Shown here: positions 250 to 53,215 of the stretch, piece after piece
Layout of the letters: each line of letters begins with the position of its first letter
Position numbering within the stretch: the first letter of the stretch is position 1
IMG/VR virus record: IMGVR_UViG_3300036770_004143
Span: 1-64,000 of that record
Strand: one strand, 5' to 3'
DNA length: 64,000 nt
Program-made: the position numbers and the translations under genes
Notes under the pieces: generated by a model
Databases searched by the model: none
Seen by the model: only the letters and a program-made list of their open reading frames with translations
What the model was told of the DNA's origin: nothing

Positions 250-1956
250 TTAAAATAAATCATCTTCTGTTATGCTCTTGCTCTTTTTATTATAATCAAC
301 TGATTTCTTATAAAAAAAATCTCCCTCCTTTGTTGATAAAATCTCCACATCAAACCATAATGTCTTCTCAATCTCTGTAAAATCAACTTCAAATACTGAT
401 TTCATCCCAATTCTATTTAATGAATTATTAAATCTATTTTGAATGAAATGTTTAATTGTATCTTTTGATAAAAAACTTAATTCACCATTCTCAAATATCC
501 AATCCAATATTCCACATTCAGCTGCATATGCTTTATGACAAGCTGACACAATCAACGCTTCAAATTCTTCGTCAAACCATTCTGGATTTTCTTCTTTGAT
601 AATGTTGATAAGTTCTGATCCAAAATTACCATGGATTTCTTCCTCCTTTGAGGTAGCTTCAACCACATTTGAAATACCTTTGAATAGATTTTTCTCCTTG
701 TTGAAGGACATCATAATCAAGAACTGACTAAATAAACTTACATGTTCAATAAACAAGGAAAATAATAATACAGACTTTGTGTACATTTTATTCTCTTTAC
801 TCCTTGTCCCATCTAAATATTTTGCCAAATAACTGATTCTATTCTTTATAGCAGGAATTTCAATAACAGTCTGGAACTCATTCTCCAATCCAAGAATTCT
901 TAATAATTGAGCATAAGCATCCTTATGACGAACTTCCGAGTTTCCTGAAATTAAAACTTTGTCATTATATCTAGTCACAATACATCCAGTAGGAACTGTA
1001 ACACAATAGATGTTACCATCATAATCTTCAATGGTAGGTTTATCAGTTATAGAAGAAAAGGTGTTAGTTTTTACAAAACTTACATTGTATATATCTTTAT
1101 CATTAGTTATATCAACTACATACCCAGCAAAAATACCTATAACTTGCAAATTATCTGCAAACAATTTACTAATAGTTTGGTGTTTAATAACATAATCACC
1201 ATTCTGAGTGTCACTATCAAGTTTAGACCCCTCCAATTTTGTTAATTCATAAATAAAAGAATTGCACCACTTTTCAGATTTATCTGATAAATCAATACAA
1301 TCAAAGTTTCCAATATTAATTTTATCATCCAAACTCAACTCATCCACACCCTCATTAACAAATTTACCAGAAAAAGGCAATTTCATATCACTACTAAATT
1401 TACCAATATCTTTTATAGCCTTCTTTATAATATTACCACTCCTTGTTTTGTAGTAGATATTATGGTTGGGGGTTAGTAATGCATTATATGTTTGGTTCTC
1501 AATCCTATGCATCTTTCCCTTGTAAGGTTCATTGATAATATTACTTGGTAAAACAGATGTCATTGTATTGGTTTCTAAATCATATTGAATAACCTCTGTA
1601 TTATTATCAATATCCTTAAAGTTAACCCAACCTTTTGGTGTTAATATTTCAGTTCCCTCACCATGACATTCGGCAAAAGTCATACCAACATCACCAATTT
1701 CAGTTATTGGCATCCTCTTATACAAGTCAGCCCAGAATGTTTTTACATTTACCTCAATTTGAGCAATTGCCAACATTGACCTTTTAATAACCTCCCTCTC
1801 CTCATTTGATATCTTTGTTTTATAATCATCAATATCAGTTGTGAAATTGAATTCAGAGTGTATCCAGTATGAGTGTCTAATTGCATCCTTATATGCTAAT
1901 AAGGATGGATATTCATAAGGCAAAATGTTTATCCTCTTTTCAAAAATGTTCTTCAT
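250..1956 (-). CDS. nrdB: Ribonucleotide reductase class I beta subunit containing an intein
   Basis: Ferritin-like R2 motifs (QIE, E-VRH, IEHVSLFSQF, EEEIH, C-terminal DFF...Y), interrupted by a 243-aa insert. Confidence 0.92.
   Translation of the reverse strand: MKNIFEKRINILPYEYPSLLAYKDAIRHSYWIHSEFNFTTDIDDYKTKISNEEREVIKRSMLAIAQIEVNVKTFWADLYKRMPITEIGDVGMTFAECHGEGTEILTPKGWVNFKDIDNNTEVIQYDLETNTMTSVLPSNIINEPYKGKMHRIENQTYNALLTPNHNIYYKTRSGNIIKKAIKDIGKFSSDMKLPFSGKFVNEGVDELSLDDKINIGNFDCIDLSDKSEKWCNSFIYELTKLEGSKLDSDTQNGDYVIKHQTISKLFADNLQVIGIFAGYVVDITNDKDIYNVSFVKTNTFSSITDKPTIEDYDGNIYCVTVPTGCIVTRYNDKVLISGNSEVRHKDAYAQLLRILGLENEFQTVIEIPAIKNRISYLAKYLDGTRSKENKMYTKSVLLFSLFIEHVSLFSQFLIMMSFNKEKNLFKGISNVVEATSKEEEIHGNFGSELINIIKEENPEWFDEEFEALIVSACHKAYAAECGILDWIFENGELSFLSKDTIKHFIQNRFNNSLNRIGMKSVFEVDFTEIEKTLWFDVEILSTKEGDFFYKKSVDYNKKSKSITEDDLF
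940..1668 (-). mobile_element. cis intein in nrdB (243 aa) with degenerate LAGLIDADG remnant
   Basis: Begins CHGEGTEILTPKGW, block B LTPNH, ends YCVTVPTGCIVTRYNDKVLISGN/S. Excision restores FAE-SEVRH. Confidence 0.9.
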
Positions 1957-31223: not shown

Positions 31224-31274
31224 TATTATTTTTTATTTATTCATATAAATATCTAAAAAATAATCAAAAAACTA

Positions 31275-32266: not shown

Positions 32267-32506
32267 TTAGTTGGTTTTTAGGTTGGGTTCAACAACTTCA
32301 AATGTTTCAGGTGTGCCAAGTATTTGACTTTCGTCGCAAAAGGTAATATACCAAAAGGGAGGTACATTTAAAGACGCAAATTGCACGTCAACTGCTTGTA
32401 ATGTTGTTCCACCTGGCTTTGGTAAGCCTTCGTTTATTCGGCAAATGTCCTGTGCGTGCAAAACATTAGCCTCATTGGTGTATTTATATCCGTTAATAAA
32501 TGCCAT
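32267..32506 (-). CDS. Hypothetical protein
   Basis: 79-aa ORF overlapping the fibre gene stop. Confidence 0.55.
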
Positions 32507-35500
32507 AATAAGTATTTACGTTGCTTTGAATATTTGTTCTATTTAAGGATTGGTCTATTGACCAAAAAATACTTTCTTGTAAATTTCCATCCATGCCACC
32601 ACCGCCATCACCATAACTACCTAATTGAAAGTTCTGTGAAGCATTTCCTGTTGAAGGTGTTCCAGTTGATGTATTTCCTTGATTTACAGAACCATTATTA
32701 AAATATACTTTTGCCCTATTTGCAACAGTAGCGTTACTTGCATCTAATTCAATAGACAATAGTGTTTGAGTATTTGTAGTTATTGTTTGTGATGTTTGAA
32801 AAGATATAGGCGAAGTAGATGGTAAGCCAGAGGAATTAGTCATAAAAACATTAATAGTATTGTTAGCTAATTTATAAACAGATAAACCTGTCTGAGCTGA
32901 TGTTCCGCCATTATTACCAAACAATGGTTTTTGTCCAGAATTGTTGTACTTTAAAACATTTAAAACAAATGATTTTGTACCATTATGTAAAAAATTAAAT
33001 GAAGCCGTAGATGTTGGGACTGTTAAAATATCATTAGTAGAATCAAAACTTAAAGCAGGTTTATTATTAATCATGATAATTGTACCACTACTTACTATTT
33101 GCGGCTGATTTGCAGCAGTTGTTTGCATTGCATTCCTTGCATTCCCACTTTGGTCATACCACGTTGTCACAAATACATTTTGATTACTACCACCTGTATT
33201 CCAAAAAGTACTAAATGTAACTTGTTGTCCAAGGCTAAGCCCACTTGTTCCAACAGCAGTAACTATAACTGTACTGCTTGCACTTATTGTATTATTCACA
33301 TCAAAAAATACATCACCTTCTGCACCACTTGTACTTGCTCTTACCTTTATTGCACTTCCATTGTATGTTACTCTTAATTTGCGCAAAGAATATGCTACAG
33401 CTGCACTTGGATATGAATCAAGTAATAATGGAGTGTAATCCAATAATGTTACAGTCTCACCTGTTGTTGTTGTTGTTGTTACATTATATGTATTAAAATT
33501 TGCTGCTGAACCTGATAAACTTGTTGGTATAAATGGTCCACTTGCTGTTTGCCCATTGACAGTACAACCTGATGAGAATTGCGCAACATAGGTGTTTGGT
33601 ATTTTAATTACAACAACACCTGACCCACCATTACCACCTACATTTTGGACACCACCACCAGCACTTGTATATGAACCACCACCACCACCACCACCAGTAA
33701 AGTTAGTGCCTGGCAATCCAGCAGCAACCGTATTACCAGAACCATCACCACCACCACCTATTCCTCCTGTTCCTCCAGCACCAACGTATCCACCACCACC
33801 ACCGCCACCACCTCGTGGTGTTAATATTCCAGTAATAGAATTATATAATCCAGCTCCACCATTACCACCGACATTTTGTGTACCAGTTCCACCTGCAGCA
33901 CTTGCGCCTCCGCCTCCACCTCCACCAAAAGTGGCATCTCCACCACCAGGGAATCCCTCAACAGGAGTATATCCACCAATATTTCCAGCTGCACCAGCAG
34001 AATCAAAACCACCACCTCCACCAGATCCACCTGGGCTTGCTGATTGTTGAAACCTTGAACCACCACCACCACCACCTGATGAATTTATGATAAAACTAGA
34101 AGTTGAACCACTAGTACCTCTTAAACTTGATGATGTTGCACCATTACCACCACCACCAACAATTATGGAATATGGTGTTCCTTTTGATAATGTTTGCAAT
34201 GTTAATGATCTGTGGCCTCCAGCTCCGCCACCACCTCCATGACCACTACCACCGCCACCACCACCAGCAACTACAAGGTAATCAACAGATACTGTTGTTG
34301 GAATTGGTGAGGTTGTTGGTGTAACTGTATTTGTTGGTGTTATGGTGTTAGTTGGTGTTATAGTTTGAGTTGGAGTTTCTGTTGGTGTGATTGTGTTGGT
34401 AGGCGTAACTGTATTTGTTGGTGTTATGGTGTTAGTTGGAGTTTCTGTTGGTGTGATTGTGTTGGTAGGCGTAACTGTATTTGTTGGTGTTATGGTGTTA
34501 GTTGGAGTTTCTGTTGGTGTGATTGTGTTGGTAGGCGTAACTGTATTTGTTGGTGTTATGGTGTTAGTTGGAGTTTCTGTTGGTGTGATTGTGTTGGTAG
34601 GTGTAACTGTATTTGTTGGTGTTTCTGTTGGTGTGATTGTGTTGGTAGGCGTAACTGTATTTGTTGGTGTTATGGTGTTAGTTGGAGTTTCTGTTGGTGT
34701 GATTGTGTTGGTAGGCGTAACTGTATTTGTTGGAGTTTCTGTTGGTGTAACTGTATTTGTTGGTGTTATGGTGTTAGTTGGTGTTATGGTGTTAGTAGGT
34801 GTTATGGTGTTAGTTGGAGTTTCTGTTGGTGTGATTGTGTTGGTAGGAGTGATTGTGTTGGTAGGCGTAATAGTTTGGGTTGGAGTTTCTGTTGGTGTGA
34901 TTGTGTTAGTTGGTGTAACTGTATTGGTTGGAGTTTCTGTTGGTGTGATTGTGTTGGTAGGCGTAACTGTATTTGTTGGTGTTATGGTGTTAGTAGGTGT
35001 TATGGTGTTAGTTGGAGTTTCTGTTGGTGTGATTGTGTTGGTAGGAGTGATTGTGTTGGTAGGCGTAATAGTTTGGGTTGGAGTTTCTGTTGGTGTGATT
35101 GTGTTAGTTGGTGTAACTGTATTGGTTGGTGTTTCTGTTGGTGTTATGGTGTTAGTTGGAGTTTCTGTTGGTGTGATTGTGTTGGTAGGCGTAACTGTAT
35201 TTGTTGGTGTTATGGTGTTAGTTGGTGTTATAGTTTGAGTTGGAGTTTCTGTTGGTGTGATTGTGTTGGTAGGCGTAACTGTATTTGTTGGTGTTATGGT
35301 GTTAGTTGGTGTTATAGTTTGAGTTGGAGTTTCTGTTGATGTAACTGTATTGGTAGGTGTAACTGTATTAGTTGGTGTTATAGTTTGAGTTGCATCCGGA
35401 GATGCTCCTGGTGTTTTTGTGGTTGAAGGTGTAATTGTATTTGTTGGAGTTATGGTGTTAGTTGGTGTTATAGTTTGAGTTGGAGTTTCTGTTGGTGTGA

Positions 35501-36485
35501 TTGTATTAGTAGGCGTAACTGTATTTGTTGGAGTTTCTGTTGGTGTGATTGTATTAGTAGGCGTAACTGTATTTGTTGGAGTTTCTGTTGGTGTGATTGT
35601 GTTAGTTGGTGTTTCTGTTGGCTTAAATGTATTGGTAGGTGTTACCGTATTTGTTGGAGTTTCTGTTGGTGTAAATGTATTGGTAGGTGTTACCGTATTT
35701 GTTGTAGTTTCTGTTGGTGTGATTGTGTTGGTAGGCGTAACTGTATTAGTTGGTGTTATAGTTTGAGTTGCATCCGGAGAAGCTCCTGGTGTTTTTGTGG
35801 TTGAAGGTGTAATTGTATTTGTTGGAGTTTCTGTTGGTGTGATTGTGTTGGTAGGTGTCATAGTTTGAGTTGCATCTGGAGACGCTCCTGGTGTTTTTGT
35901 AGTTGAAGGTGTAATTGTATTAGTTGGTGTGATTGTGTTTGTAGGAGTTATAGTAGGTGTTGCTGTTACATCTAAACCACTTGTAATACTAGGTGTTGGT
36001 GTATTAGTAATACTTGGTGTAATTGTTTGAGTTGGTGTTATAGTTTGAGTTGGCGTTTCTGTGCTTGTTGGCGTTATAGTGTTTGAAGGTGTAATAGTTA
36101 CTGTTATTGTTGGAGTTATAGTTTGAGTTGGTGTAACTGTGTTTGTTGGTGTATTTGTAGTAGTAATTGATGGTGTTATAGTATTTGAAGGTGTTATTGA
36201 TGGGGTTACAGTTATTGTTGGAGTAATTGAAGGTGTAACTGTATTTGTTGGCGTATTTGTTGGAGTTGCATCAACTACTTCTGGAACAATTATTTCATAA
36301 TTTGTAAGATATTTTGGAACATATAATGTATATAAACCACTTAATTTACCTGTTTCGGGTCTTGAATAAACATCAAAAGGAATAACATTTTCACCAATAT
36401 TATAAGTGATATTGTTTTGCAATAACGTTACAAAAACAATCTCACCATTTAAATTTACACTTGTTATCCTTAATGCTGATGCCAT
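32493..36485 (-). CDS. Fibre/adhesin-like virion protein: Thr/Pro mucin-like stalk, Gly-rich domain, C-terminal lectin-like beta-sandwich
   Basis: About 650 aa of TPT(N/E/Q)T(I/V) repeats; [13 protein letters not shown]...GGSGVVVI Gly-rich domain; AYSLRKL...[11 protein letters not shown] domain. Confidence 0.75.
34310..36270 (-). repeat. Coding tandem repeat region (12/18-nt units, higher-order 66-nt units)
   Basis: Three perfect 66-nt copies starting at 34371, 34437 and 34503; three copies of [19 protein letters not shown]. Confidence 0.95.
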
Positions 36486-40138: not shown

Positions 40139-40170
40139 AAAACCCCCAACCATAAAGATTGGGGGTTTTT
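40139..40170. terminator. Bidirectional terminator between convergent units
   Basis: AAAACCCCCAA-CCATAAAGA-TTGGGGGTTTTT. Confidence 0.75.
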
Positions 40171-40172
40171 CA

Positions 40173-40757
40173 TTATACTATTATTTGACCTTTTATAACT
40201 CCAGGCTTAATCATATCTCTTAATTCATTAAATGAATATTGTTCTAATTCTGTATATCTTATATATAAATTCTCACCAACTTCTAAGCCTTCTGGTAATG
40301 AAGTTATTTTTGTTCCACTTATATTCAAATCACCCCCAACTTTCAACCCTTTTGGTAATGAGGTAATTTCTAATCCTTCTAAATTTAAATACCCTTTAAC
40401 ATTTAATCCTTCCGGTATTGATGTTATTTTTGATTGAAAAAGGGTTAAACTATTCCCAACTTTTAAGCCTTGTGGTAATGATTTTATTTTTGAATAATGT
40501 AAATACAAATCATCACCAACTTCCAATCCTTCTGGTAATGATATTATTTTTGAATATGATAAATCTAAAGTACCACTAACTTTTAATCCTTTTGGTAATG
40601 ATTTTATTTTTGAATCAAATAAATCCAAATCACCTTTAACATTTAAATCTTTTTCTGTTAATTGAATTTTACTCTTCACTTTCCACAAGAATGGAGGGTT
40701 ACAATTTTCCTTTCCTTGAAGGAAATCAAATATTCTTTTTAGTACTTCTTTTTCCAT
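40173..40757 (-). CDS. LRR array protein 8 (6 repeats)
   Basis: 20-aa ITSLPEGLKVGGxLxLxxSx repeats with conserved caps. Confidence 0.85.
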   Translation of the reverse strand: MEKEVLKRIFDFLQGKENCNPPFLWKVKSKIQLTEKDLNVKGDLDLFDSKIKSLPKGLKVSGTLDLSYSKIISLPEGLEVGDDLYLHYSKIKSLPQGLKVGNSLTLFQSKITSIPEGLNVKGYLNLEGLEITSLPKGLKVGGDLNISGTKITSLPEGLEVGENLYIRYTELEQYSFNELRDMIKPGVIKGQIIV

Positions 40758-41239
40758 TATCTAATTATTTCTCCTTTTATAAATCCAGGTTTAATCATTT
40801 CCCTTAATTCTTCATCTGAATATTTTATTAATGGTGTGTACTTTATATACAAAATCTTACCAACTTCCAATCCTTTTGGTAATGAGGTTATGGCATCACA
40901 ACCAATTATGTTTAATTCACCACCAACTTTTAAATTATCTGGCAATGAGGTTATTTTTTTTTGGGCTCTTAAATCCAAACTACCCCCAACTTCTAATCCT
41001 TCTGGTAATGATGTTATTTTTGTTTTATATAAATGCAAATAACCACTAATTTTCAATCCTTTTGGTAGTGATTTTATTTTTGATTTATACAAATCCAAAT
41101 TACCTTTGAAATTTAAATCTTCTTCTGTTAATGGGTAATTAAGCATAATTTTCCATGTTAGAGTTCTTTTATATTTTGGTATTTTATTTTCCTTCTCTTC
41201 AAGAAAATCAAATATTCTTTTTAGTGCTTGTTTTTCCAT
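40757..41239 (-). CDS. LRR array protein 7 (4 repeats)
   Basis: Same caps and repeats. Confidence 0.85.
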   Translation of the reverse strand: MEKQALKRIFDFLEEKENKIPKYKRTLTWKIMLNYPLTEEDLNFKGNLDLYKSKIKSLPKGLKISGYLHLYKTKITSLPEGLEVGGSLDLRAQKKITSLPDNLKVGGELNIIGCDAITSLPKGLEVGKILYIKYTPLIKYSDEELREMIKPGFIKGEIIR

Positions 41240-41242
41240 TAT

Positions 41243-41644
41243 CTAATATATATTTCCATTTATATAACCAGGTTTTATCATTTCTCTTAATTCATCATCT
41301 GAAAGTTTTTCTAATTTTGATCCTCTAGTAAATAAATCACCCTCTAATTTCAAACCTTTTGGCAATAATGTTATTGATGTGTATCTTAAATACAAATCGC
41401 CACCAATTTTCAATCCTTCTGGTAATGAGGTTATTGCTGATCCAAATAATAACAAATTTCCCATAACTTTTAACCCTTCTGGTAGTGAAGTTATATTTGA
41501 ATTATGTAAATCTAAATCACCTTCAATATTTAAATCATCTTCTATTAATGGTATATCATGCCTCAATTTCCATAATAATGGTGGATTACAATTTTCCTTC
41601 TCTTCAAGAAAATCAAATATTCTTTTTAGTTGTTCTTTTTTCAT
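41243..41644 (-). CDS. LRR array protein 6 (3 repeats)
   Basis: Same caps and repeats. Confidence 0.85.
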   Translation of the reverse strand: MKKEQLKRIFDFLEEKENCNPPLLWKLRHDIPLIEDDLNIEGDLDLHNSNITSLPEGLKVMGNLLLFGSAITSLPEGLKIGGDLYLRYTSITLLPKGLKLEGDLFTRGSKLEKLSDDELREMIKPGYINGNIY

Positions 41645-42126
41645 TATATTAATATTTCTCCATGTATAAATCCAGGATAAACCATTTCTCTTAATTCATC
41701 CTCATAATCATCATTATAATCATAGTCATCAGCTAATGGAGTTCCAATTAAGTCCAAATCACCGCCAACTTCCAATCCTTTTGGTAATGATTTTATATCT
41801 GTATATACTATATTCAAATCACCGCCAACTTCTAATCCTTCTGGTAGTGATGTTATTTTTGTATTAGCCAAAGACAAATCACCCCCAACTTTCAACCCTT
41901 TTGGTAATAACATTATCTTTGAAATGGATAAATCTAAATCACCTTCAACTTTCAACCCTTCTGGCAATGAAGTTATATTTGATTGAAACAAATTCAAATT
42001 GCCTTTAACATTTAAATCTTCTTCTATTAATGGTTCATTATTTTTAAATTTCCATAAAAATGGTGCTCTATGCTCTCCCTTCTCTTCAAGGAAATCAAAT
42101 ATTCTTTTTAGTGCTTCTTTTTCCAT
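41644..42126 (-). CDS. LRR array protein 5 (4 repeats)
   Basis: Same caps and repeats. Confidence 0.85.
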   Translation of the reverse strand: MEKEALKRIFDFLEEKGEHRAPFLWKFKNNEPLIEEDLNVKGNLNLFQSNITSLPEGLKVEGDLDLSISKIMLLPKGLKVGGDLSLANTKITSLPEGLEVGGDLNIVYTDIKSLPKGLEVGGDLDLIGTPLADDYDYNDDYEDELREMVYPGFIHGEILI

Positions 42127-42653
42127 TATCTAATTATTTTTCCTTTTATAAATCCAGGTTTAATCATTTCTCTTAATTCCTCTTCAGTGTATTTAGTTAA
42201 ACTTGTGAGTTTTACATTTACACCACCATCAACTTTCAATCCTTTTGGTAATGATGTCAAATTTTTACACATTATTAAAAATAAATTCTTGCCAACATAT
42301 AATCCTTCTGGTAATGATGTTATATTTGTATAATCTAAATGCAAATCCTTCCCAACTTTCAATCCTTCTGGTAATGATTTAATATTTGAATGTTCTAAAT
42401 CCAAATCACCGCCAACTTCTAAACCTTTTGGCAATGATTCTATTTTTGAACCATATAAATCCAAATTACCACCAACTACTAGTCCTTCTGGCAATGAGGT
42501 TATATCTGAATTTAAGAGACTCAAAGTCCCTTCAACATTTAATTCTTCTTTGGTTAATGGTATATCATTTTTCAACTTCCACATAAATGGTGCAATATGT
42601 TCTCCCTTTGCTTCAAGGAAATCAAATATTCTTTTTAGTGCTTCTTTTTTCAT
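42126..42653 (-). CDS. LRR array protein 4 (5 repeats)
   Basis: Same caps and repeats. Confidence 0.85.
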   Translation of the reverse strand: MKKEALKRIFDFLEAKGEHIAPFMWKLKNDIPLTKEELNVEGTLSLLNSDITSLPEGLVVGGNLDLYGSKIESLPKGLEVGGDLDLEHSNIKSLPEGLKVGKDLHLDYTNITSLPEGLYVGKNLFLIMCKNLTSLPKGLKVDGGVNVKLTSLTKYTEEELREMIKPGFIKGKIIR

Positions 42654-43237
42654 GTCCTATATATCTTTCCTTTTATAACTCCAGGTTTTATCATTTCTCT
42701 TAATTGTTTATTTGTGTATTTTTTTAATGGTGTGTTATATATATGTAAATTACCACCAACTTTCAAGTCTTCTGGTAATGAGGTTATATTTGAATATGCT
42801 AAATTCAAATAACCACCAACTTTCAAACCTTTTGGTAATGAGGTTATATTTGAATATGATAAATACAAATTACCTCTAACTATTAACCCTTCTGGTAATG
42901 ATTTTATTTTTGAATAATGTAAATACAAATCATCACCAACTTCCAATCCTTCTGGTAATGATATTATTTCTGAATATGATAAATCCAAATAACCAAAAAC
43001 TTTCAAGCCTTCTGGTAATGAGGTTATGTTTGAATCATTTAAATTTAAATTCCCCTCAACCTCTAATCCTTCTGGCAATGAGGTTAGAATTGTTCTTCTT
43101 AAATCCAAAGTACCACTAACTTTCAAATCTTCTTTTGTTAATGGTATATTATTAATTAATTTCCATTTAACTGGTGCATTTTGCTCTCCTTTCTCTTCAA
43201 GGAAATCAAATATTCTTTTTAGTGCTTCTTTTTTCAT
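42650..43237 (-). CDS. LRR array protein 3 (6 repeats)
   Basis: Same caps and repeats. Confidence 0.85.
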   Translation of the reverse strand: MKKEALKRIFDFLEEKGEQNAPVKWKLINNIPLTKEDLKVSGTLDLRRTILTSLPEGLEVEGNLNLNDSNITSLPEGLKVFGYLDLSYSEIISLPEGLEVGDDLYLHYSKIKSLPEGLIVRGNLYLSYSNITSLPKGLKVGGYLNLAYSNITSLPEDLKVGGNLHIYNTPLKKYTNKQLREMIKPGVIKGKIYRT

Positions 43238-43641
43238 CTCCTATATATCTTTCCTTTTATAACTCCAGGTTTTATCATTTCTATTAATTGTTTATTTGTG
43301 TATTTTTTTAATGGTGTGTTATTTATATGTAAATTCCCACCAACTTTCAATCCTTCTGGTAGTGAGGTTATTTTTGAACCCATTAAAAATAAAGCACCTT
43401 CAACTGTTAAATCATTTGGTAATGAGGTTATGTCTGTTAAATATAAATTCAAATAACCACCAACTTTCAATCCTCTTGGTAATGAGGTTATTTTTGAGTA
43501 ATGTAAATTCAAATCACCTTTAACATTTAAATCTTCTTCTATTAATGGTTCATTATTTTTAAATTTCCATAAAAATGGTGCTCTATGCTCTTCCTTCTCT
43601 TCAAGGAAATCAAATATTCTTTTTAGTGCTTGTTTTTCCAT
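43234..43641 (-). CDS. LRR array protein 2 (3 repeats)
   Basis: Same caps and repeats. Confidence 0.85.
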   Translation of the reverse strand: MEKQALKRIFDFLEEKEEHRAPFLWKFKNNEPLIEEDLNVKGDLNLHYSKITSLPRGLKVGGYLNLYLTDITSLPNDLTVEGALFLMGSKITSLPEGLKVGGNLHINNTPLKKYTNKQLIEMIKPGVIKGKIYRR

Positions 43642-44045
43642 TATCTAACTATATCATATTTTATAAATCCAGGTTTAATCATTTCCCTTAATTCTTCACC
43701 TGAATATTTTGTTAATGGTGTTCCATAAATATACAAATCACCCCCAACTTCCAATCCTTTTGGTAATGTTTGTATTGGCAAAAAAGCTAATAGTAAATTA
43801 TTCCCAACTTTCAATCCTTCTGGTAATGTTTCTATATTTAATTGTATTAAATCTAATGTCCCCCCAACTTTCAATCCTTTTGGTAATGAAGTTATGTTTG
43901 TTCCTGATAAATCCAAATTGCCTTTAACATTTAATTCTTCTTCTCTTAATGGTATATCATGCATCAATTTCCATAATAATGGTGGATTACAATTTTCCTT
44001 CTCTTCAAGAAAATCAAATATTATTTTTAGTACAGTATTATCCAT
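43641..44045 (-). CDS. LRR array protein 1 (3 repeats)
   Basis: Start taken at MDNTVLKIIFDFLEEK by alignment with paralogs. Confidence 0.85.
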   Translation of the reverse strand: MDNTVLKIIFDFLEEKENCNPPLLWKLMHDIPLREEELNVKGNLDLSGTNITSLPKGLKVGGTLDLIQLNIETLPEGLKVGNNLLLAFLPIQTLPKGLEVGGDLYIYGTPLTKYSGEELREMIKPGFIKYDIVR

Positions 44046-44053
44046 TATCTTAA

Positions 44054-44070
44054 TATTTATATTATAAATA
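44054..44070. promoter_or_regulatory. Palindromic pair of TATTTATA motifs serving the divergent LRR array and SOD
   Basis: TATTTATA-T-TATAAATA; each copy is 17-18 nt upstream of the start codon on its own strand. Confidence 0.6.
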
Positions 44071-44079
44071 TAATCTTTT

Positions 44080-44769
44080 ATGAAAATACTGGAAACAATC
44101 AAAGAAGAAATAATATCAAGAATACATAAAGATAATGTTGATTTCTTAATTCAAGAAATGAAAAAAGTTGGCATTGAAAAACTTCCTTATTCATATGCTT
44201 CATTAAAACCTTTTGTTGATGAAAAGACAATGAATATTCATTATAATAAACATTATATTGGTTATGTGGATAAATTGAATAAAGCATTAAAGAACACAAA
44301 ATCAAATGGTGATTTAAAGCAAATCATATCAAATATAAGCAAATATGATGATAAGATTAGGAATAATGCTGGTGGTGCATTTAATCATGCTTTATTCTGG
44401 AATATGTTAACCCCCACCAAAAAGAATGTTCCAAGTGAATTAAAAACAAAAATAAATGCAAGTTTTGGGACATTTAATGCTTTCAAGAAAAAGTTTGAGG
44501 AGGTTGCAAAAGACCATTTTGGATCCGGATGGGTCTGGCTTGTTGCAACCAAAAATAATAGATTAAAAGTAATAAGCACACCAAACCAGGATAATCCCCT
44601 TATGAATGTGATTAAGGATGGGGGTTTTCCAATATTGGGATTGGATTTATGGGAACATGCTTATTATCTAAAATATCAAAACAAAAGGGATGAATATATT
44701 CATAACTTTTGGGATTATGTAAATTGGGATTTTGTTCTTGAATTATATCAAAATGCAAATGATAAGTAG
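44080..44769 (+). CDS. sodA: Fe/Mn superoxide dismutase (Mn-type signature) with N-terminal extension
   Basis: LPYSY..L.P, H..KH..YV, NNAGGAFNH.LFW, FGSGWVWL, NQD, DLWEHAYYL.YQN.R. Confidence 0.9.
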   Translation: MKILETIKEEIISRIHKDNVDFLIQEMKKVGIEKLPYSYASLKPFVDEKTMNIHYNKHYIGYVDKLNKALKNTKSNGDLKQIISNISKYDDKIRNNAGGAFNHALFWNMLTPTKKNVPSELKTKINASFGTFNAFKKKFEEVAKDHFGSGWVWLVATKNNRLKVISTPNQDNPLMNVIKDGGFPILGLDLWEHAYYLKYQNKRDEYIHNFWDYVNWDFVLELYQNANDK

Positions 44770-44808
44770 CCAAAAGAATAGTTTCTTATATTTATATATA
44801 AAAGAAAT

Positions 44809-49891: not shown

Positions 49892-52800
49892 ATGAAAAAC
49901 ATTTTTAAAACGTTGCTATTCACATTTGCAACGTTAACAATTAGTTATGGCCAAGTAACAACTTCAGCCATATCAGGAACAATCAAAGATGCAAGTAATG
50001 AGGTGCTTATTGGTGCAACAATTGAAGCAGTTCATTTACCATCTGGAACAAGTTATGGTACATCCACAGATGTTGATGGTACATATAGGATTTCAGGAAT
50101 GCGCATTGGTGGTCCTTATAGCATCACAGTTAGCTATGTAGGTTATGCCACAAAAACCCAATCAAATGTCATTTTGAACTTGGGGTCAACAGCAAATCTA
50201 AGTTATTCACTTGATGTGGTTGAATATGGTTTGACTGAAGTTACTATTAATGCAAACAAAAGTGGTATTTTTTCATCTAATAGAACAGGTGCTGCCACAC
50301 AGTTTAATTCAACTATGATTAATAGTTTACCAACAATTGGAAGAACAATTGATGATATCACAAAATATAATGCTTATGGAAATGGGCGTTCATTTGGTGG
50401 TCAAGATAGCCGTTTTAACAACTTCACAATTGATGGTTCTGTATTCAACAATGGCTTTGGTCTTGGGTCTTCTGCTGCTGCTGGTGGTAGAACAGGAACA
50501 ACAGCAATCTCCATTGATGCACTTGAAGAAGTGCAATTGAATATTGCCCCCTTTGATGTTAGACAATCAGGGTTTGTTGGTGCTGGTGTAAATGCTGTAA
50601 CCCGCTCTGGAACAAATGATATTGAAGGATCATTCTATCGTTTGTTTAGGTCAAGTGATTTAGTTGGTAAAATAGTAAATGGTGTTAAACTACCTACAAT
50701 CTTTGTTGATGAAAAAACAACAGGGTTTAGGATTGGTGCACCAATTATTAAGAACAAGTTGTTTATCTTTGCAAATGCTGAACAATTTGTTGGGTCAACT
50801 CCAGCATTAAGTTGGCAAACAAACAAGCCTGGTGCAACAGGCAATGTATCAAGAGTAACTGAAAGTGATTTGAAGGATTTGGCTTCATTTATGAAAACAA
50901 ACTTTAATTATGAGTTGGGACAACTTGATAATTTTAACAATGATGTAAAGAGTACAAAAGGGCTTATTCGTTTGGATTATAACATTAATCAAAAACATAA
51001 AGCGTCTTTAAGGTATTCTCATCATAATTCTGAATCTGAACAACTTATTAGTTCATCAAATAGTTCTAATACTGCAGGTAATGGAAATAGACAAAACTCT
51101 GCCTTTGCAATTTCAGGGGAAAACACAGGTTATCTTATTCAAGATAATACAAGGTCAGTAGCATTTGAATTGAATTCAGTTCTAACATCAAAAATATCAA
51201 ACAATTTTATTGCAACTTACAATAAGCAAATTGAAGATAGAAAATATAGAACAGATTTATTCCCAACTGTGGACATTTTAAAAGATGGTACAACTTATAC
51301 AACAGTTGGTTTTGACCCCTTTACACCAAATAATAAATTGAATTATAGTACATTGAATTTGACAAACAATTTTAATTTACTATCTGGAAAACATTATTTC
51401 ACTTTTGGTGTAGGTTATGAGTATTTCCAATCAAATAATGTGTTCTTCCCAGCATCAAATGGTGTCTATGTATATAACTCTATTGATGACTTCAAGAAAG
51501 CAGCATTACAATTCAAAAATGACCCAAACAATCCACTTTCACCAGTTACTGTTAATCGTTACAATTTAAGATATTCATTACTACCAGGGGGTATTGAGCC
51601 AATGCAAACCTTAAAAGTTTCAACATTAAGTGCTTATGTTCAAGATGAATATACATTAACTGAAAAGTTAAAAATAACTGCAGGTTTAAGAGGCGATGTT
51701 GTTATGTATGACAATTCAACAGCAGCAGATTTCTATAATCCAGTTGTTGGTGGTTTGACATTCACAGATAAAAATGGCCAACCTACTAAGATTAACACAA
51801 ATAAATTCCCAAGCAGAGCATTATTGTTATCCCCAAGATTAGGATTCAACTATGATGTGGATGGTGAGAGAACAACCCAAGTTAGGGGTGGAACAGGAAT
51901 ATTTGTTTCTCGTATTCCACAAGTATTAGTTTCAAATCAATTAGGTAATAATGGTGTAAATACAGCTGTAATCAATGTAACAAATACAACAGCATACCCA
52001 TTCACAACTGACCCAAGCAGATTTGCACCAACAACAACAGATATTACAAGTTTACGTCCTTATGTTATTAATGCGTCAAGTCAGGATTTGAAATACCCAT
52101 CAGTATGGAAATCAAATATTGCTGTTGACCACAAATTACCTTTTGGGTTAGTTGCTACATTAGAAGGTGTATATGGTAAGACATTATCTGGTTTAAGATA
52201 TATTGATGCTAACTTAAAAGCACCAGATAGATATTTGGCAGATGAAAGACCACGTTTCCCAGCATCAGGTGTAACAAGTTCAGGTTCTGGTGCAACAAAT
52301 ACAGTTGCTGTTGCAAGATTCTTAAACCCAACCATTGCAAATGCGTTTGTTCTTACAAATACAGATAGAGGTTATTCTTATGCTTTAACTGCAAAGATTG
52401 AAAAACCAGCAGTTAATGGTTTAGGTGGTATGATTGGTTATACCAATGCAAAATCCACTGACCTCCAATCAGTTGGTAGCACAGTTCAAGCAAATGCCCC
52501 TACTGTTGGCGGACAAAACTTCTTAACGCCTTCCTTTACAGATAATGATTTACGTCATAGATTTGTTGGATATGTTAACTATAGAATAAATTATGGTGGC
52601 AAGTTTGGAGGTTCAACAGAAGTTACATTAGGTGCAACATCTGCAAGTGGAAGCAAATTAAGTTATATTTATGGAAATGATTTAAATGGTGATGGTCAGA
52701 TTAATGATTTGATTTATATACCACAAAATGCCACAGAATTGACATTTGCAACACTTACAGCAGGTGGTAAGACTTTCACCCCAGAACAACAACAAGTAGC

Positions 52801-53215
52801 ATTAGATGCTCTTATTTCAAGCGATGAATACCTTAACTCACGTAGAGGAACATATGCACAAAGAAATGGTGGATTTTTTCCTTGGTTAACAAGAGTTGAT
52901 TTATCAGCAGTTCAAGAAGTTTATGTTAATGTTAATGGTAAGTTAAATAGATTACAATTTAGAGCAGATATTCTTAACTTTGGAAATATGTTAAACAATG
53001 CTTGGGGTGTAGGGTATTCCACAACATCTGGTAGTTTTGGCACAGCAAGTCCTTTGACAGTTGCATCAGTTTCAGCAGCAGGTGTGCCAACATATAGAAT
53101 GGCAACAAGAGTTGTTGATGGTGCTACACAATTACTTGACAAGACATTTGTTAAGACAATTAGTGTTGGAAATGCTTGGCAGGCTCAATTAGGGTTAAGG
53201 TATTTCTTTAATTAA
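49892..53215 (+). CDS. TonB-dependent outer-membrane receptor (Oar-like, N-terminal carboxypeptidase-regulatory-like domain)
   Basis: Sec signal peptide; ISGTIKD..LIGATI..; plug NFTIDG...[11 protein letters not shown]...[21 protein letters not shown]; YVQDE; SPRLGFNYD; C-terminal beta-signal QLGLRYFFN. Confidence 0.9.

What the first reader, a model, noticed from the sequence alone, without database searches (positions are those of the whole stretch)
40173..44045. Eight-gene LRR repertoire with constant caps, variable repeat number and cassette shuffling
Seen: eight tightly coupled paralogs share an N-cap (MEKEALKRIFDFLEEK) and C-cap (ELREMIKPGFIKGKI) around 3-6 copies of a 20-aa repeat (34 in total). 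The scaffold ITSLPEGLKV.G is fixed while positions in xLxLxx vary strongly. Near-identical patches link different gene pairs: 40473-40565 vs 42893-42985 (93 nt, 1 mismatch), 42002-42076 vs 43517-43591 (75 nt identical), 42656-42738 vs 43240-43322 (1 mismatch). Established: the LxLxx strand forms the ligand-binding concave face of LRRs, and lamprey VLRs and plant NLRs diversify by LRR module exchange. Inference: a recombination-diversified binder library, for example against host defence proteins or competing phages. There are no signal peptides, so the proteins are likely cytoplasmic or virion-borne.
Basis: partly seen in the sequence, partly recalled or inferred. Interest (0 to 1): 0.82.

Follow-up and report, generated by a model that had tools for sequence, protein, structure and literature searches.

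The report
Expanded LRR binder family, jumbo phage
An uncultured 270-kb T4-like phage carries at least 34 small leucine-rich-repeat genes. Eight are in this window, with one fixed frame and one highly variable surface, and they are reshuffled between copies and between related phages. This looks like a library of binding proteins, but the targets are unknown.

Summary
There are eight abutting minus-strand genes at 40173-44045, with 34 repeats of 20 aa, constant caps and the three near-identical patches as described.

Structure prediction (pLDDT 93) and profile matches to solved structures show a short-period LRR solenoid. The closest solved relative is Vibrio FlrP. The variable residues are the outward-facing x positions of xLxLxx on one beta-sheet.

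The array is one operon. A promoter-like motif shared with the tail sheath, neck and amidase genes precedes it, and a strong terminator hairpin follows it.

The window is the first 64 kb of a 270-kb phage contig that holds three more arrays, at least 34 genes in all. An independent assembly has an identical array, so mis-assembly is unlikely. Related phages keep the flanking genes but carry 7, 10 or 11 genes in this slot, or an IS607-like element instead. Some cassettes are 100% identical where the flanks are only 86-90% identical.

So recombination and gene turnover are shown. Positive selection is not: dN/dS is 0.69 at variable sites and 0.26 at scaffold sites. Nothing suggests programmed shuffling.

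The family has at least 1,783 relatives in metagenomes. The nearest clusters in a protein atlas are almost all labelled viral, and it has no Pfam or PHROG family. Its targets are unknown. Counter-defence or host-range binding is my best guess, and virion display is a serious rival.

The parts
43641..44045 (-). g1, first gene of the operon, 134 aa, 3 repeats
   Evidence: The ATG at 44045 matches the family N-terminus (MDNT.LK). The longer TTG start at 44102 is not supported by the relatives.
43234..43641 (-). g2, 135 aa, 3 repeats. It is a chimera: its N-cap is 98% identical to g5 and its C-cap 98% identical to g3.
   Evidence: It is 100% nt identical to L008_g7.
42650..43237 (-). g3, 195 aa, 6 repeats. 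This is the protein I modelled.
   Evidence: AF2 pLDDT 93.2, pTM 0.84. It is 100% nt identical to L008_g8.
42126..42653 (-). g4, 175 aa, 5 repeats (one of 21 aa)
   Evidence: It was the query, which found at least 1,783 relatives. It has no counterpart at 90% identity or more in L008.
41644..42126 (-). g5, 160 aa, 4 repeats, with an acidic insert in the C-cap
   Evidence: It is 99.4% identical to L008_g9.
41243..41644 (-). g6, 133 aa, 3 repeats
   Evidence: It is 99.5% identical to L008_g10. It shares a 59-nt exact match with g1.
40757..41239 (-). g7, 160 aa, 4 repeats (two of 21 aa), with a 4-residue insert in the N-cap
   Evidence: It is 97% identical to L008_g1, which sits at a different place in that array.
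40173..40757 (-). g8, last gene, 194 aa, 6 repeats
   Evidence: Compared with L008_g6, it differs almost only at the two ends of the gene.
44063..44071 (-). Promoter-like motif ATATTTATA, 18 nt upstream of the g1 start codon. A second copy at 44053-44061 (+) faces the divergent SOD gene.
   Evidence: There are 12 copies in the window against 6.1 expected. Ten or eleven of them lie 12-26 nt upstream of a start codon in the right orientation.
40139..40170 (-). Intrinsic-terminator-like hairpin followed by a U run, directly after the g8 stop codon
   Evidence: free energy -21.5 kcal/mol, z = -5.1, 0 of 200 shuffles fold as well.
40707..40764 (.). One of eight copies of a 58-nt junction repeat (end of the intergenic junction plus the first ~18 codons of each gene). 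Copies are 83-98% identical. The others start at 41189, 41594, 42076, 42603, 43187, 43591 and 43995.
   Evidence: family D6. In codons 2-16, 93% of codons are identical where the amino acid is the same, against 72% in the repeat scaffold.
40473..40565 (.). Mosaic patch g8/g3 (partner 42893-42985), 93 nt with 1 mismatch. It spans parts of two repeats.
42002..42076 (.). Mosaic patch g5/g2 (partner 43517-43591), 75 nt identical, in the N-cap.
42656..42738 (.). Mosaic patch g3/g2 (partner 43240-43322), 83 nt with 1 mismatch, in the C-cap.

Best explanation
What is shown. The eight genes form one operon of a phage-specific multigene family of small, single-domain, capped leucine-rich-repeat proteins. 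Each protein is a short beta-solenoid. Its invariant residues (I..LP.GL.V...L.L) build the core. The outward-facing residues of one parallel beta-sheet (x in xLxLxx) differ from repeat to repeat and from gene to gene, so each protein presents a different flat binding surface whose length depends on its 3-6 repeats.

The repertoire changes in four ways:
(i) whole genes are gained, lost and reordered, apparently by unequal recombination at the very conserved 58-nt gene junctions;
(ii) repeat number changes;
(iii) conversion tracts pass between paralogues;
(iv) whole cassettes are exchanged between related phages.

What is inferred. The proteins stay in the infected cell's cytoplasm, or are carried in the virion. 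There they act as stoichiometric binders of variable host proteins. That would make them a host-range or counter-defence arsenal, comparable to the repeat-protein multigene families of large eukaryotic viruses. The operon is probably switched on together with the late structural genes.
For: Fold:
- AF2 gives pLDDT 93 with a regular beta ladder every 20 residues.
- A family profile matches solved LRR proteins: a designed LRR at 5e-39, Vibrio FlrP at 3e-33, SlrP and SspH1 at about 1e-8.
- Foldseek's best hit is FlrP, followed by IpaH, SspH1 and VLR structures.

Variable face:
- Entropy is 2.4-3.5 bits at repeat positions 13, 15, 17, 18 and 20, and 3.3-3.8 bits at the same positions in 990 units.
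- These positions alternate with the core leucines on the modelled strand.
- They are rich in D, N, Y and S, as binding surfaces often are.
- pI ranges from 4.2 to 9.7 across the family.

Operon:
- Start and stop codons abut.
- The promoter-like motif is, and the terminator.

Turnover:
- The same slot between the helicase and SOD genes holds 8, 11, 10 or 7 genes, or an IS607-like element, in relatives whose flanks are 82-90% identical.
- g2 and g3 are 100% identical to genes of L008, whose flanks are 86-90% identical.
- g8 differs from its L008 counterpart almost only at the gene ends.
- The caps of g2 give incongruent relationships.

Scale:
- The 270-kb genome has at least 34 genes, about 167 repeats and 6,033 codons in four arrays.
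- There are at least 1,783 relatives in metagenomes.
- The nearest protein-atlas clusters are almost all labelled Viruses.
- The N-cap was not found in GTDB genomes, and occurs in no other architecture among 1.84 billion representatives.

Dispensable at this slot: L011 has no LRR gene there.

Weak parallel: a distantly related LRR gene in Edwardsiella phage Edno5 sits in the early-left accessory operon, between cI and exo/recT.
Against: - No target is known, and there is no similarity to any described anti-defence protein or to any PADLOC model.
- The promoter motif is shared with the sheath, gp13-like neck and amidase genes, and is absent before the helicase, DnaB-like and DNA polymerase genes. 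This points to late expression. Most counter-defence genes act early, unless their products are packaged into the virion.
- In a relative, arrays sit next to the gp23-type capsid gene, which fits a virion role.
- dN/dS at the variable positions is 0.69, not above 1.
- Some cassettes are identical between diverged phages, so individual genes are conserved units rather than fast-mutating ones.
- Expression timing, localisation and binding are all inferred.
Confidence: 0.4

Rival explanations
1. Virion-displayed host-recognition modules. The proteins are made late and dock on the capsid, neck or fibres through their conserved caps. Their variable faces bind host surface structures. Many paralogues would then broaden or hedge host range.
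For: - The promoter-like motif is shared with the sheath, neck and amidase genes.
- The array sits next to the gp13-like neck gene, and arrays flank the gp23-like capsid gene in a relative.
- Receptor-binding genes are typically the most mosaic and most exchanged genes of phages, which matches.
- The N-terminal helix is strongly conserved.
- LRR or beta-helix domains have been proposed as host-recognition elements in phage Goslar (bioRxiv 10.64898/2026.04.21.720040).
Against: - The proteins are very small (133-195 aa), single-domain, and have no recognisable anchoring or trimerisation domain.
- Thirty-four or more different decorations would be unusual.
- The conserved cap residues are mostly hydrophobic, as expected of plain LRR caps.
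- dN/dS of the caps (0.61) is not lower than that of the variable face.
- SOD, which is not a structural gene, carries the same motif.
Confidence: 0.25
2. Packaged and injected internal proteins, by analogy with the T4 IP locus. The proteins are made late, loaded into the head, ejected with the DNA, and neutralise host nucleases or sensors at entry.
For: - The phage is T4-like: the sheath gene is, and the gp13 and gp23 homologues are.
- The promoter class looks late.
- These are small tandem genes whose content varies between relatives, with a conserved N-terminus.
- T-even internal proteins are described as a highly diverse set of defence proteins that share only a capsid-targeting sequence (PMC3012670).
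Against: - The conserved N-terminus is an integral cap helix in the model.
- It occurs only in this family, not on unrelated proteins.
- A T4-type [LIV]xE site near it is present in only 103 of 224 genes.
- No virion data exist.
Confidence: 0.15
3. Binders of the phage's own proteins, for example assembly chaperones, scaffolds or regulators, so that the diversity is not aimed at the host.
For: Apparent late co-expression with the structural genes. LRRs are general protein-binding scaffolds, and FlrP is a structural spacer in a large machine.
Against: Phage-internal partners are conserved, which does not explain hypervariable faces, variation in copy number, or the complete loss of the array from this slot in L011.
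Confidence: 0.1
4. Programmed diversification within an infection or population, by VLR-like cassette assembly or a diversity-generating retroelement.
Against: - All eight genes are complete, capped ORFs.
- Two independent assemblies are identical over 21.7 kb.
- Some genes are identical in a diverged relative.
- I saw no donor cassettes and no template repeat.
Confidence: 0.02
5. Assembly artefact, or a functionless selfish expansion of a repetitive gene.
For: Repetitive arrays are prone to mis-assembly. The gene junctions are homogenised at the nucleotide level.
Against: - The array is identical in an independent sample.
- All genes have intact reading frames, here and in 259 unique relatives.
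- There is strong purifying selection on scaffold residues (dN/dS 0.01-0.2 at L, P and G).
- The operon signals are intact.
Confidence: 0.04

Closest known systems
Vibrio FlrP (PDB 8z5u chain 0), an LRR protein bound to the rod of the polar flagellar motor (bioRxiv 10.64898/2025.12.04.692373)
   Same: It has the same unusual 20-residue repeat with a V-G-G turn before the xLxL strand. The family profile matches it at E = 3e-33, and it is the best structural match (TM 0.57-0.62, 29% identity). It is also a small single-domain solenoid that works purely by binding.
   Different: FlrP is a bacterial periplasmic protein with a Sec signal peptide, a different head and tail, and one copy. The phage proteins have no signal peptide, carry their own conserved caps, and are massively multiplied.
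LRR domains of the IpaH, SspH1 and SlrP type III effectors (short bacterial LRR class)
   Same: They have a period of about 20 residues with an LxLxx(N/S/T)xLxxLP core. The matches are weak but consistent in sequence and fold. In those proteins the concave face selects host targets.
   Different: The phage proteins have no NEL ubiquitin-ligase domain and no secretion signal. The second LP motif is replaced by GL.V.GG. The Pfam LRR models score below threshold.
T-even phage internal proteins (IPI*, IPII, IPIII) and their polymorphic locus (PMC3012670)
   Same: They are small, non-essential tandem genes of a T4-type phage, highly variable between relatives, with a conserved N-terminus. IPI* is a binder that blocks a host nuclease.
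   Different: The IPs have unrelated folds and share only a cleavable targeting peptide. Here a single fold is diversified, the N-terminus is part of the fold and is confined to the family, and no packaging has been shown.
Repeat-protein multigene families of large eukaryotic viruses (poxvirus ankyrin host-range genes, ASFV MGF, giant-virus ankyrin and LRR families; PMC5753266 appeared in the hit list but I did not open it)
   Same: These are lineage-specific expansions of a binding scaffold in tandem arrays, with copy number varying between strains, in the largest genomes of their class. This comparison rests on my general knowledge.
   Different: Those viruses infect eukaryotes. Many of those proteins carry an effector-recruiting module such as an F-box, and none is seen here.
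Lamprey variable lymphocyte receptors
   Same: Constant N- and C-caps flank a variable number of LRR modules. Diversity is concentrated on the beta-strand face. VLRs appear among the fold and profile matches.
   Different: VLRs are assembled somatically from partial cassettes into one incomplete germline gene. Here every gene is complete and the shuffling happens on an evolutionary timescale.
Bacillus phage G zinc-ribbon expansion (about 35 copies; PMC7824862)
   Same: It is a comparable copy number of one small domain in a jumbo phage, called 'unprecedented' by the authors.
   Different: It has a different fold and a different presumed role (DNA binding or transcription). No hypervariable surface is described.
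Edwardsiella phage Edno5 gene 0047 (AYP69195.1)
   Same: It has the same VGG-type 20-aa repeat (41% identity over 172 residues of the query), and it is also a phage accessory gene.
   Different: It has different N- and C-terminal parts, is a single copy, belongs to a temperate lambdoid phage, and sits in the early-left operon.

Membership tests
Leucine-rich repeat superfamily | Tandem repeats of 20-30 residues with an LxxLxLxx(N/C/S/T)xL core | tested here: met
   There are 34 units with the pattern x-L-x-L-x-x-S/T-x-I-x-x-L-P. The same pattern holds in 990 units.
Leucine-rich repeat superfamily | Score above the curated threshold of a Pfam LRR model | tested here: not met
   All LRR_1, LRR_3, LRR_4 and LRR_8 hits are below the gathering score, and three of the eight proteins have no hit at all.
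Leucine-rich repeat superfamily | Solenoid fold with a parallel beta-sheet formed by the LxL strands | tested here: met
   This is a prediction only. AF2 gives pLDDT 93.2 with strands recurring every 20 residues. Foldseek hits are almost all LRR proteins. Profile E-values to solved LRR proteins reach 5e-39.
IpaH / SspH / SlrP effector family | C-terminal NEL E3 ligase domain | tested here: not met
   The proteins end 30-35 residues after the last repeat. Only the LRR part of SlrP is matched.
IpaH / SspH / SlrP effector family | Repeat period of about 20 residues with LxxLPxLP | tested here: inconclusive
   The period of 20 is met. The second LP is replaced by G-L-x-V-G-G.
FlrP-like flagellar LRR proteins | Sec signal peptide and periplasmic location | tested here: not met
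   The N-termini are charged helices (MEKEALKRIFDFLEEK) with no hydrophobic signal segment. FlrP has a signal peptide at M1-A19.
FlrP-like flagellar LRR proteins | Binding to the flagellar rod | not testable with these tools
   This needs biochemistry or cryo-EM.
VLR-type somatic LRR assembly | An incomplete germline gene completed from flanking partial cassettes | tested here: not met
   All eight genes are complete capped ORFs. The array is identical in two independent assemblies.
Diversity-generating retroelement target | Reverse transcriptase plus a template repeat that differs from the variable repeat at adenines | not tested
   No reverse transcriptase appeared among the ORFs I scanned, but the scan was not exhaustive. 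The shared patches are between coding paralogues.
T4-type internal proteins | A short N-terminal capsid-targeting sequence shared by otherwise unrelated proteins | tested here: not met
   The N-cap profile hits only this family among 3,473 ORFs from related phages. In 1.84 billion representatives it occurs only at the N-terminus of proteins of this type, apart from two marginal internal matches in longer proteins.
T4-type internal proteins | A prohead-protease site ([LIV]xE) after the targeting sequence | tested here: inconclusive
   The motif is present in residues 10-20 of 103 of 224 genes.
T4-type internal proteins | Presence inside the virion and ejection with the DNA | not testable with these tools
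   There is no cultured relative. The only related protein in 50,697 phage records is Edno5_0047.
Known defence or anti-defence protein families | Match to a curated model | tested here: not met
   PADLOC gives no hit. PHROGs gives one weak hit, to a family of unknown function.

The most novel reading that the evidence does not exclude
A T4-like jumbo phage of Bacteroidota keeps a germline library of dozens of LRR 'antibody-like' inhibitors. They are made late, loaded into the particle and injected with the DNA. Each particle would then arrive armed against many alternative host defence proteins. The library is updated by swapping cassettes between co-infecting phages at conserved gene junctions.
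Probability: 0.15. Interest if true: 0.85.

Novelty: new variant of a known kind. Interest (0 to 1): 0.62.

Why it matters
Tandem multigene families of repeat-scaffold binders are a hallmark of large eukaryotic viruses and of host immune systems. I found no description of one in phages in the searched literature. The nearest reported case is a roughly 35-copy zinc-ribbon expansion in phage G, which its authors called unprecedented.

Here about 6.7% of a 270-kb phage genome is one LRR family, with a textbook variable binding face, and with clear gene turnover and cassette exchange between related phages.

If the targets are host defence or surface proteins, the family would give three things:
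- a natural, compact (133-195 aa), cysteine-poor binder scaffold with known variable positions;
- a handle on host-range determination in uncultured freshwater Bacteroidota phages;
- a test case for arms-race gene amplification in phages.

If the proteins turn out to be simple virion decorations, the finding is less important, but it would still describe a new family.

Tried and rejected
- Pfam, PHROGs, NCBIfam and PADLOC gave no family. There were only sub-threshold LRR hits and weak matches to the SlrP, XopAC and XopL LRR regions.
- The blastn hit to Pelagibacter phage HTVC202P is a 58-nt chance resemblance to the C-cap codons (KKQLIEMI) in an unrelated 53-aa ORF.
- A GTDB scan with an N-cap pattern found no relative. 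That was a single pattern, so the result is weak negative evidence.
- The T4 late-promoter consensus TATAAATA is not enriched (18 found, 16.7 expected). The position-specific motif is ATATTTATA instead.
- The generic sigma-70 and terminator scan was uninformative, and it missed the terminator.
- A capsid-targeting-like N-terminal signal shared with other proteins was not found.
- A conserved protease site was not found.
- Positive selection was not found. A pooled Nei-Gojobori count on 57 independent close pairs gave omega below 1 in every class except position 13 (1.09) and three near-invariant positions with very few changes. This method is crude and ignores recombination.
The claim that the variable sites lie on one surface therefore rests on the strand pattern of the model and on LRR geometry, not on measured solvent exposure.

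Full report
OBSERVATION

The region 40173-44045 holds eight minus-strand ORFs of 194, 160, 133, 160, 175, 195, 135 and 134 aa. Their stop and start codons overlap by 1 or 4 nt, or lie 3 nt apart. I number them g1 to g8 in the direction of transcription, from 44045 down to 40173. They align over a common N-terminal segment of about 42 aa and a C-terminal segment of about 32 aa. Between these lie 3, 3, 6, 5, 4, 3, 4 and 6 repeats, 34 in all. Thirty-one are 20 aa and three are 21 aa.

Entropy per repeat position is 0-0.6 bits at the core scaffold residues I, L, P, G, L, V and L. It is 2.4-3.5 bits at the x positions of xLxLxx and the following x. The same profile appears in 990 units from 259 related genes.

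Repeats are on average 70% identical (sd 8%). The median longest exact match between gene pairs is 27 nt, against 77, 75 and 59 nt for the three best pairs, so these patches are far beyond chance.

WHAT THE PROTEINS ARE

No curated library recognises the family. The Pfam LRR models score below threshold, PHROGs gives one weak hit of unknown function, and PADLOC gives nothing.

A model of g3 built on 72 homologues has pLDDT 93.2, with short strands recurring every 20 residues. A family profile matches solved LRR proteins: a designed LRR at 5e-39, Vibrio FlrP at 3e-33, and SlrP and SspH1 at about 1e-8. The best structural match is FlrP (TM 0.57-0.62), followed by IpaH, SspH1 and VLR structures. 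FlrP is a small periplasmic LRR protein that binds the flagellar rod.

In the model, the strand L14-x15 of each unit forms one parallel sheet. The core leucines therefore alternate with the variable positions 13, 15 and 17, which must all point outward on the same face. The variable positions are rich in D, N, Y and S. pI ranges from 4.2 to 9.7 across the family. The N-termini are charged helices, so I see no signal peptides.

OPERON

The motif ATATTTATA occurs 12 times in the window, against 6.1 expected. Ten or eleven copies lie 12-26 nt upstream of a start codon in the right orientation. It precedes g1, the divergent superoxide dismutase gene, the tail sheath gene, the gp13-like neck gene, several large unknown genes and, elsewhere in the same genome, an amidase gene. 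It is absent before the SNF2 helicase, DnaB-like helicase and DNA polymerase genes. It also precedes arrays in many relatives. I infer a late or structural promoter class.

Directly after the g8 stop codon there is a hairpin of -21.5 kcal/mol (z = -5.1) followed by a U run.

GENOME AND FAMILY

The window is the first 64 kb of a 270,075-bp IMG/VR contig. The phage is a T4-like myovirus. It has a T4-type sheath gene, and relatives with the same gene order carry annotated gp13 and gp23 homologues. No cultured phage is a close relative.

The window also encodes a SusC-like TonB-dependent receptor. It is 80% identical to one in a Saprospiraceae MAG and 71-73% identical to those of Haliscomenobacter MAGs, which suggests a freshwater Bacteroidota host.

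The same genome carries three more arrays. Together they give at least 34 genes, about 167 repeats and 6,033 codons, or about 6.7% of the genome. In a tree of the caps, genes from the four arrays are intermixed.

The family has at least 1,783 relatives in metagenomes, with lengths quantised in steps of about 20 aa. Some members have up to 18 repeats and the same caps. The nearest protein-atlas clusters are almost all labelled Viruses. The N-cap is found at the N-terminus of proteins of this type and in no other clear architecture. It was not found in GTDB genomes.

TURNOVER AND RECOMBINATION

An independent assembly from another sample is identical over 21.7 kb including the array, which argues against mis-assembly.

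Relatives whose flanking genes are 82-90% identical at the nucleotide level carry different contents in the same slot: 11 genes (L008), 10 (L014), 7 (L050), at least 6 (L007), or an IS607-like TnpA/TnpB pair and no LRR gene (L011).

Gene order differs between the window and L008. Even so, g2 and g3 are 100% identical to L008 genes, g5 and g6 are 99.4-99.5% identical, and g7 and g8 are 97% identical. Compared with its L008 counterpart, g8 differs almost only in the first 63 and last 60 nt. g2 has g5's N-cap (98%) and g3's C-cap (98%).

A 58-nt junction repeat covers the first codons of every gene. In codons 2-16, 93% of codons are identical where the amino acid is the same, against 72% in the repeat scaffold. 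This fits homogenised junctions serving as crossover sites, but that reading is an inference.

SELECTION

I pooled Nei-Gojobori counts over 57 independent close pairs. dN/dS was 0.69 at the variable positions (1.09 at position 13), 0.26 at scaffold positions (0.05 or less at the core L and P), and 0.61 in the caps. In g7 against its L008 counterpart, 5 of 8 non-junction amino-acid changes fall on the variable strand positions, but the numbers are small. Constraint is therefore relaxed on the variable face, and positive selection is not demonstrated.

INTERPRETATION

Three things are shown: a capped LRR binder scaffold, a hypervariable face, and diversification by duplication, repeat-number change, conversion and cassette exchange. 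Nothing points to programmed shuffling.

The targets are unknown. I favour binding of variable host proteins, as a host-range or counter-defence function (0.4). My reasons are the accessory, dispensable and fast-turnover character of the arrays, the lack of any anchoring domain, and the analogy with viral repeat-protein multigene families.

The late-type promoter and the structural neighbours keep virion display (0.25) and IP-like packaging (0.15) as serious alternatives. T-even internal proteins are a documented precedent for a variable, late-made, injected set of inhibitors (PMC3012670). However, the N-terminus here is not a shared targeting peptide, and a protease site is not conserved.

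NOVELTY

My literature searches found no description of an LRR multigene family in phages. The nearest report is a roughly 35-copy zinc-ribbon expansion in phage G (PMC7824862). I rate this a new variant of a known kind.

Noticed in passing
window 49892-53215 (+): The phage encodes a SusC-like TonB-dependent outer-membrane receptor (CarboxypepD_reg plus OMP_b-brl_4 domains). It is 80% identical to one on a Saprospiraceae MAG contig and 71-73% identical to those of Haliscomenobacter MAGs. This suggests the host lineage and recent gene capture.
   Followed up: partly
window 44080-44769 (+): A complete Fe/Mn superoxide dismutase gene lies divergent from the LRR operon. It has its own copy of the ATATTTATA motif in the 34-nt gap between the two.
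   Followed up: partly
window 32493-36485 (-), and the wider segment 31.3-36.5 kb: A 1330-aa ORF has about 640 aa of [12 protein letters not shown]-like Thr/Pro repeats, then a Gly_rich_2 domain. This causes the extreme GC skew at 34-36 kb. The whole 5.3-kb segment is absent from relatives L008 and L007, so it is a second variable island.
   Followed up: partly
window, 12 sites, e.g. 31244-31252 (-), 44053-44061 (+), 44788-44796 (+): The position-specific motif ATATTTATA lies 12-26 nt upstream of start codons. It precedes the sheath, gp13-like neck, SOD and LRR-array genes and several unknown genes, but not the replication genes. It is probably the phage's late promoter, and it differs from T4's TATAAATA.
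   Followed up: partly
L011:12312-14086: An IS607-like element (serine-recombinase TnpA plus TnpB) occupies the helicase/SOD slot in a relative that has no LRR gene there.
   Followed up: partly
L096 (about 93-104 kb of the contig), L001 (about 150-154 kb), L091 (about 217-233 kb): The same 270-kb genome has three further arrays of the family, with 8, 7 and 11 genes. In L001 a 206-aa non-LRR ORF directly precedes the array.
   Followed up: partly
L142:12276-13841: This is the only fusion I saw. A 521-aa protein has an unknown N-terminal domain of about 270 aa, then five repeats, a C-cap and a Thr/Pro-rich tail. Pfam gives no hit.
   Followed up: partly
L003:5022-5765 (Edwardsiella phage Edno5 gene 0047): A temperate enterobacterial phage has a 247-aa protein with seven near-identical VGG-type LRR units and an unrelated C-terminal domain. 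The gene lies in the early-left operon between cI and exo/recT.
   Followed up: partly
   Followed up: yes
L025-L081 (relatives with 62-65% helicase identity), about 1.5-3 kb upstream of the helicase gene: Several small ORFs begin with MK[IV][IL]I[TN]E[SNR]Q, a recurring N-terminal motif on otherwise different proteins.
   Followed up: no
window 250-1956 (-): The ribonucleotide reductase small-subunit homologue carries an N-terminal extension of about 330 aa with no Pfam match.
   Followed up: no
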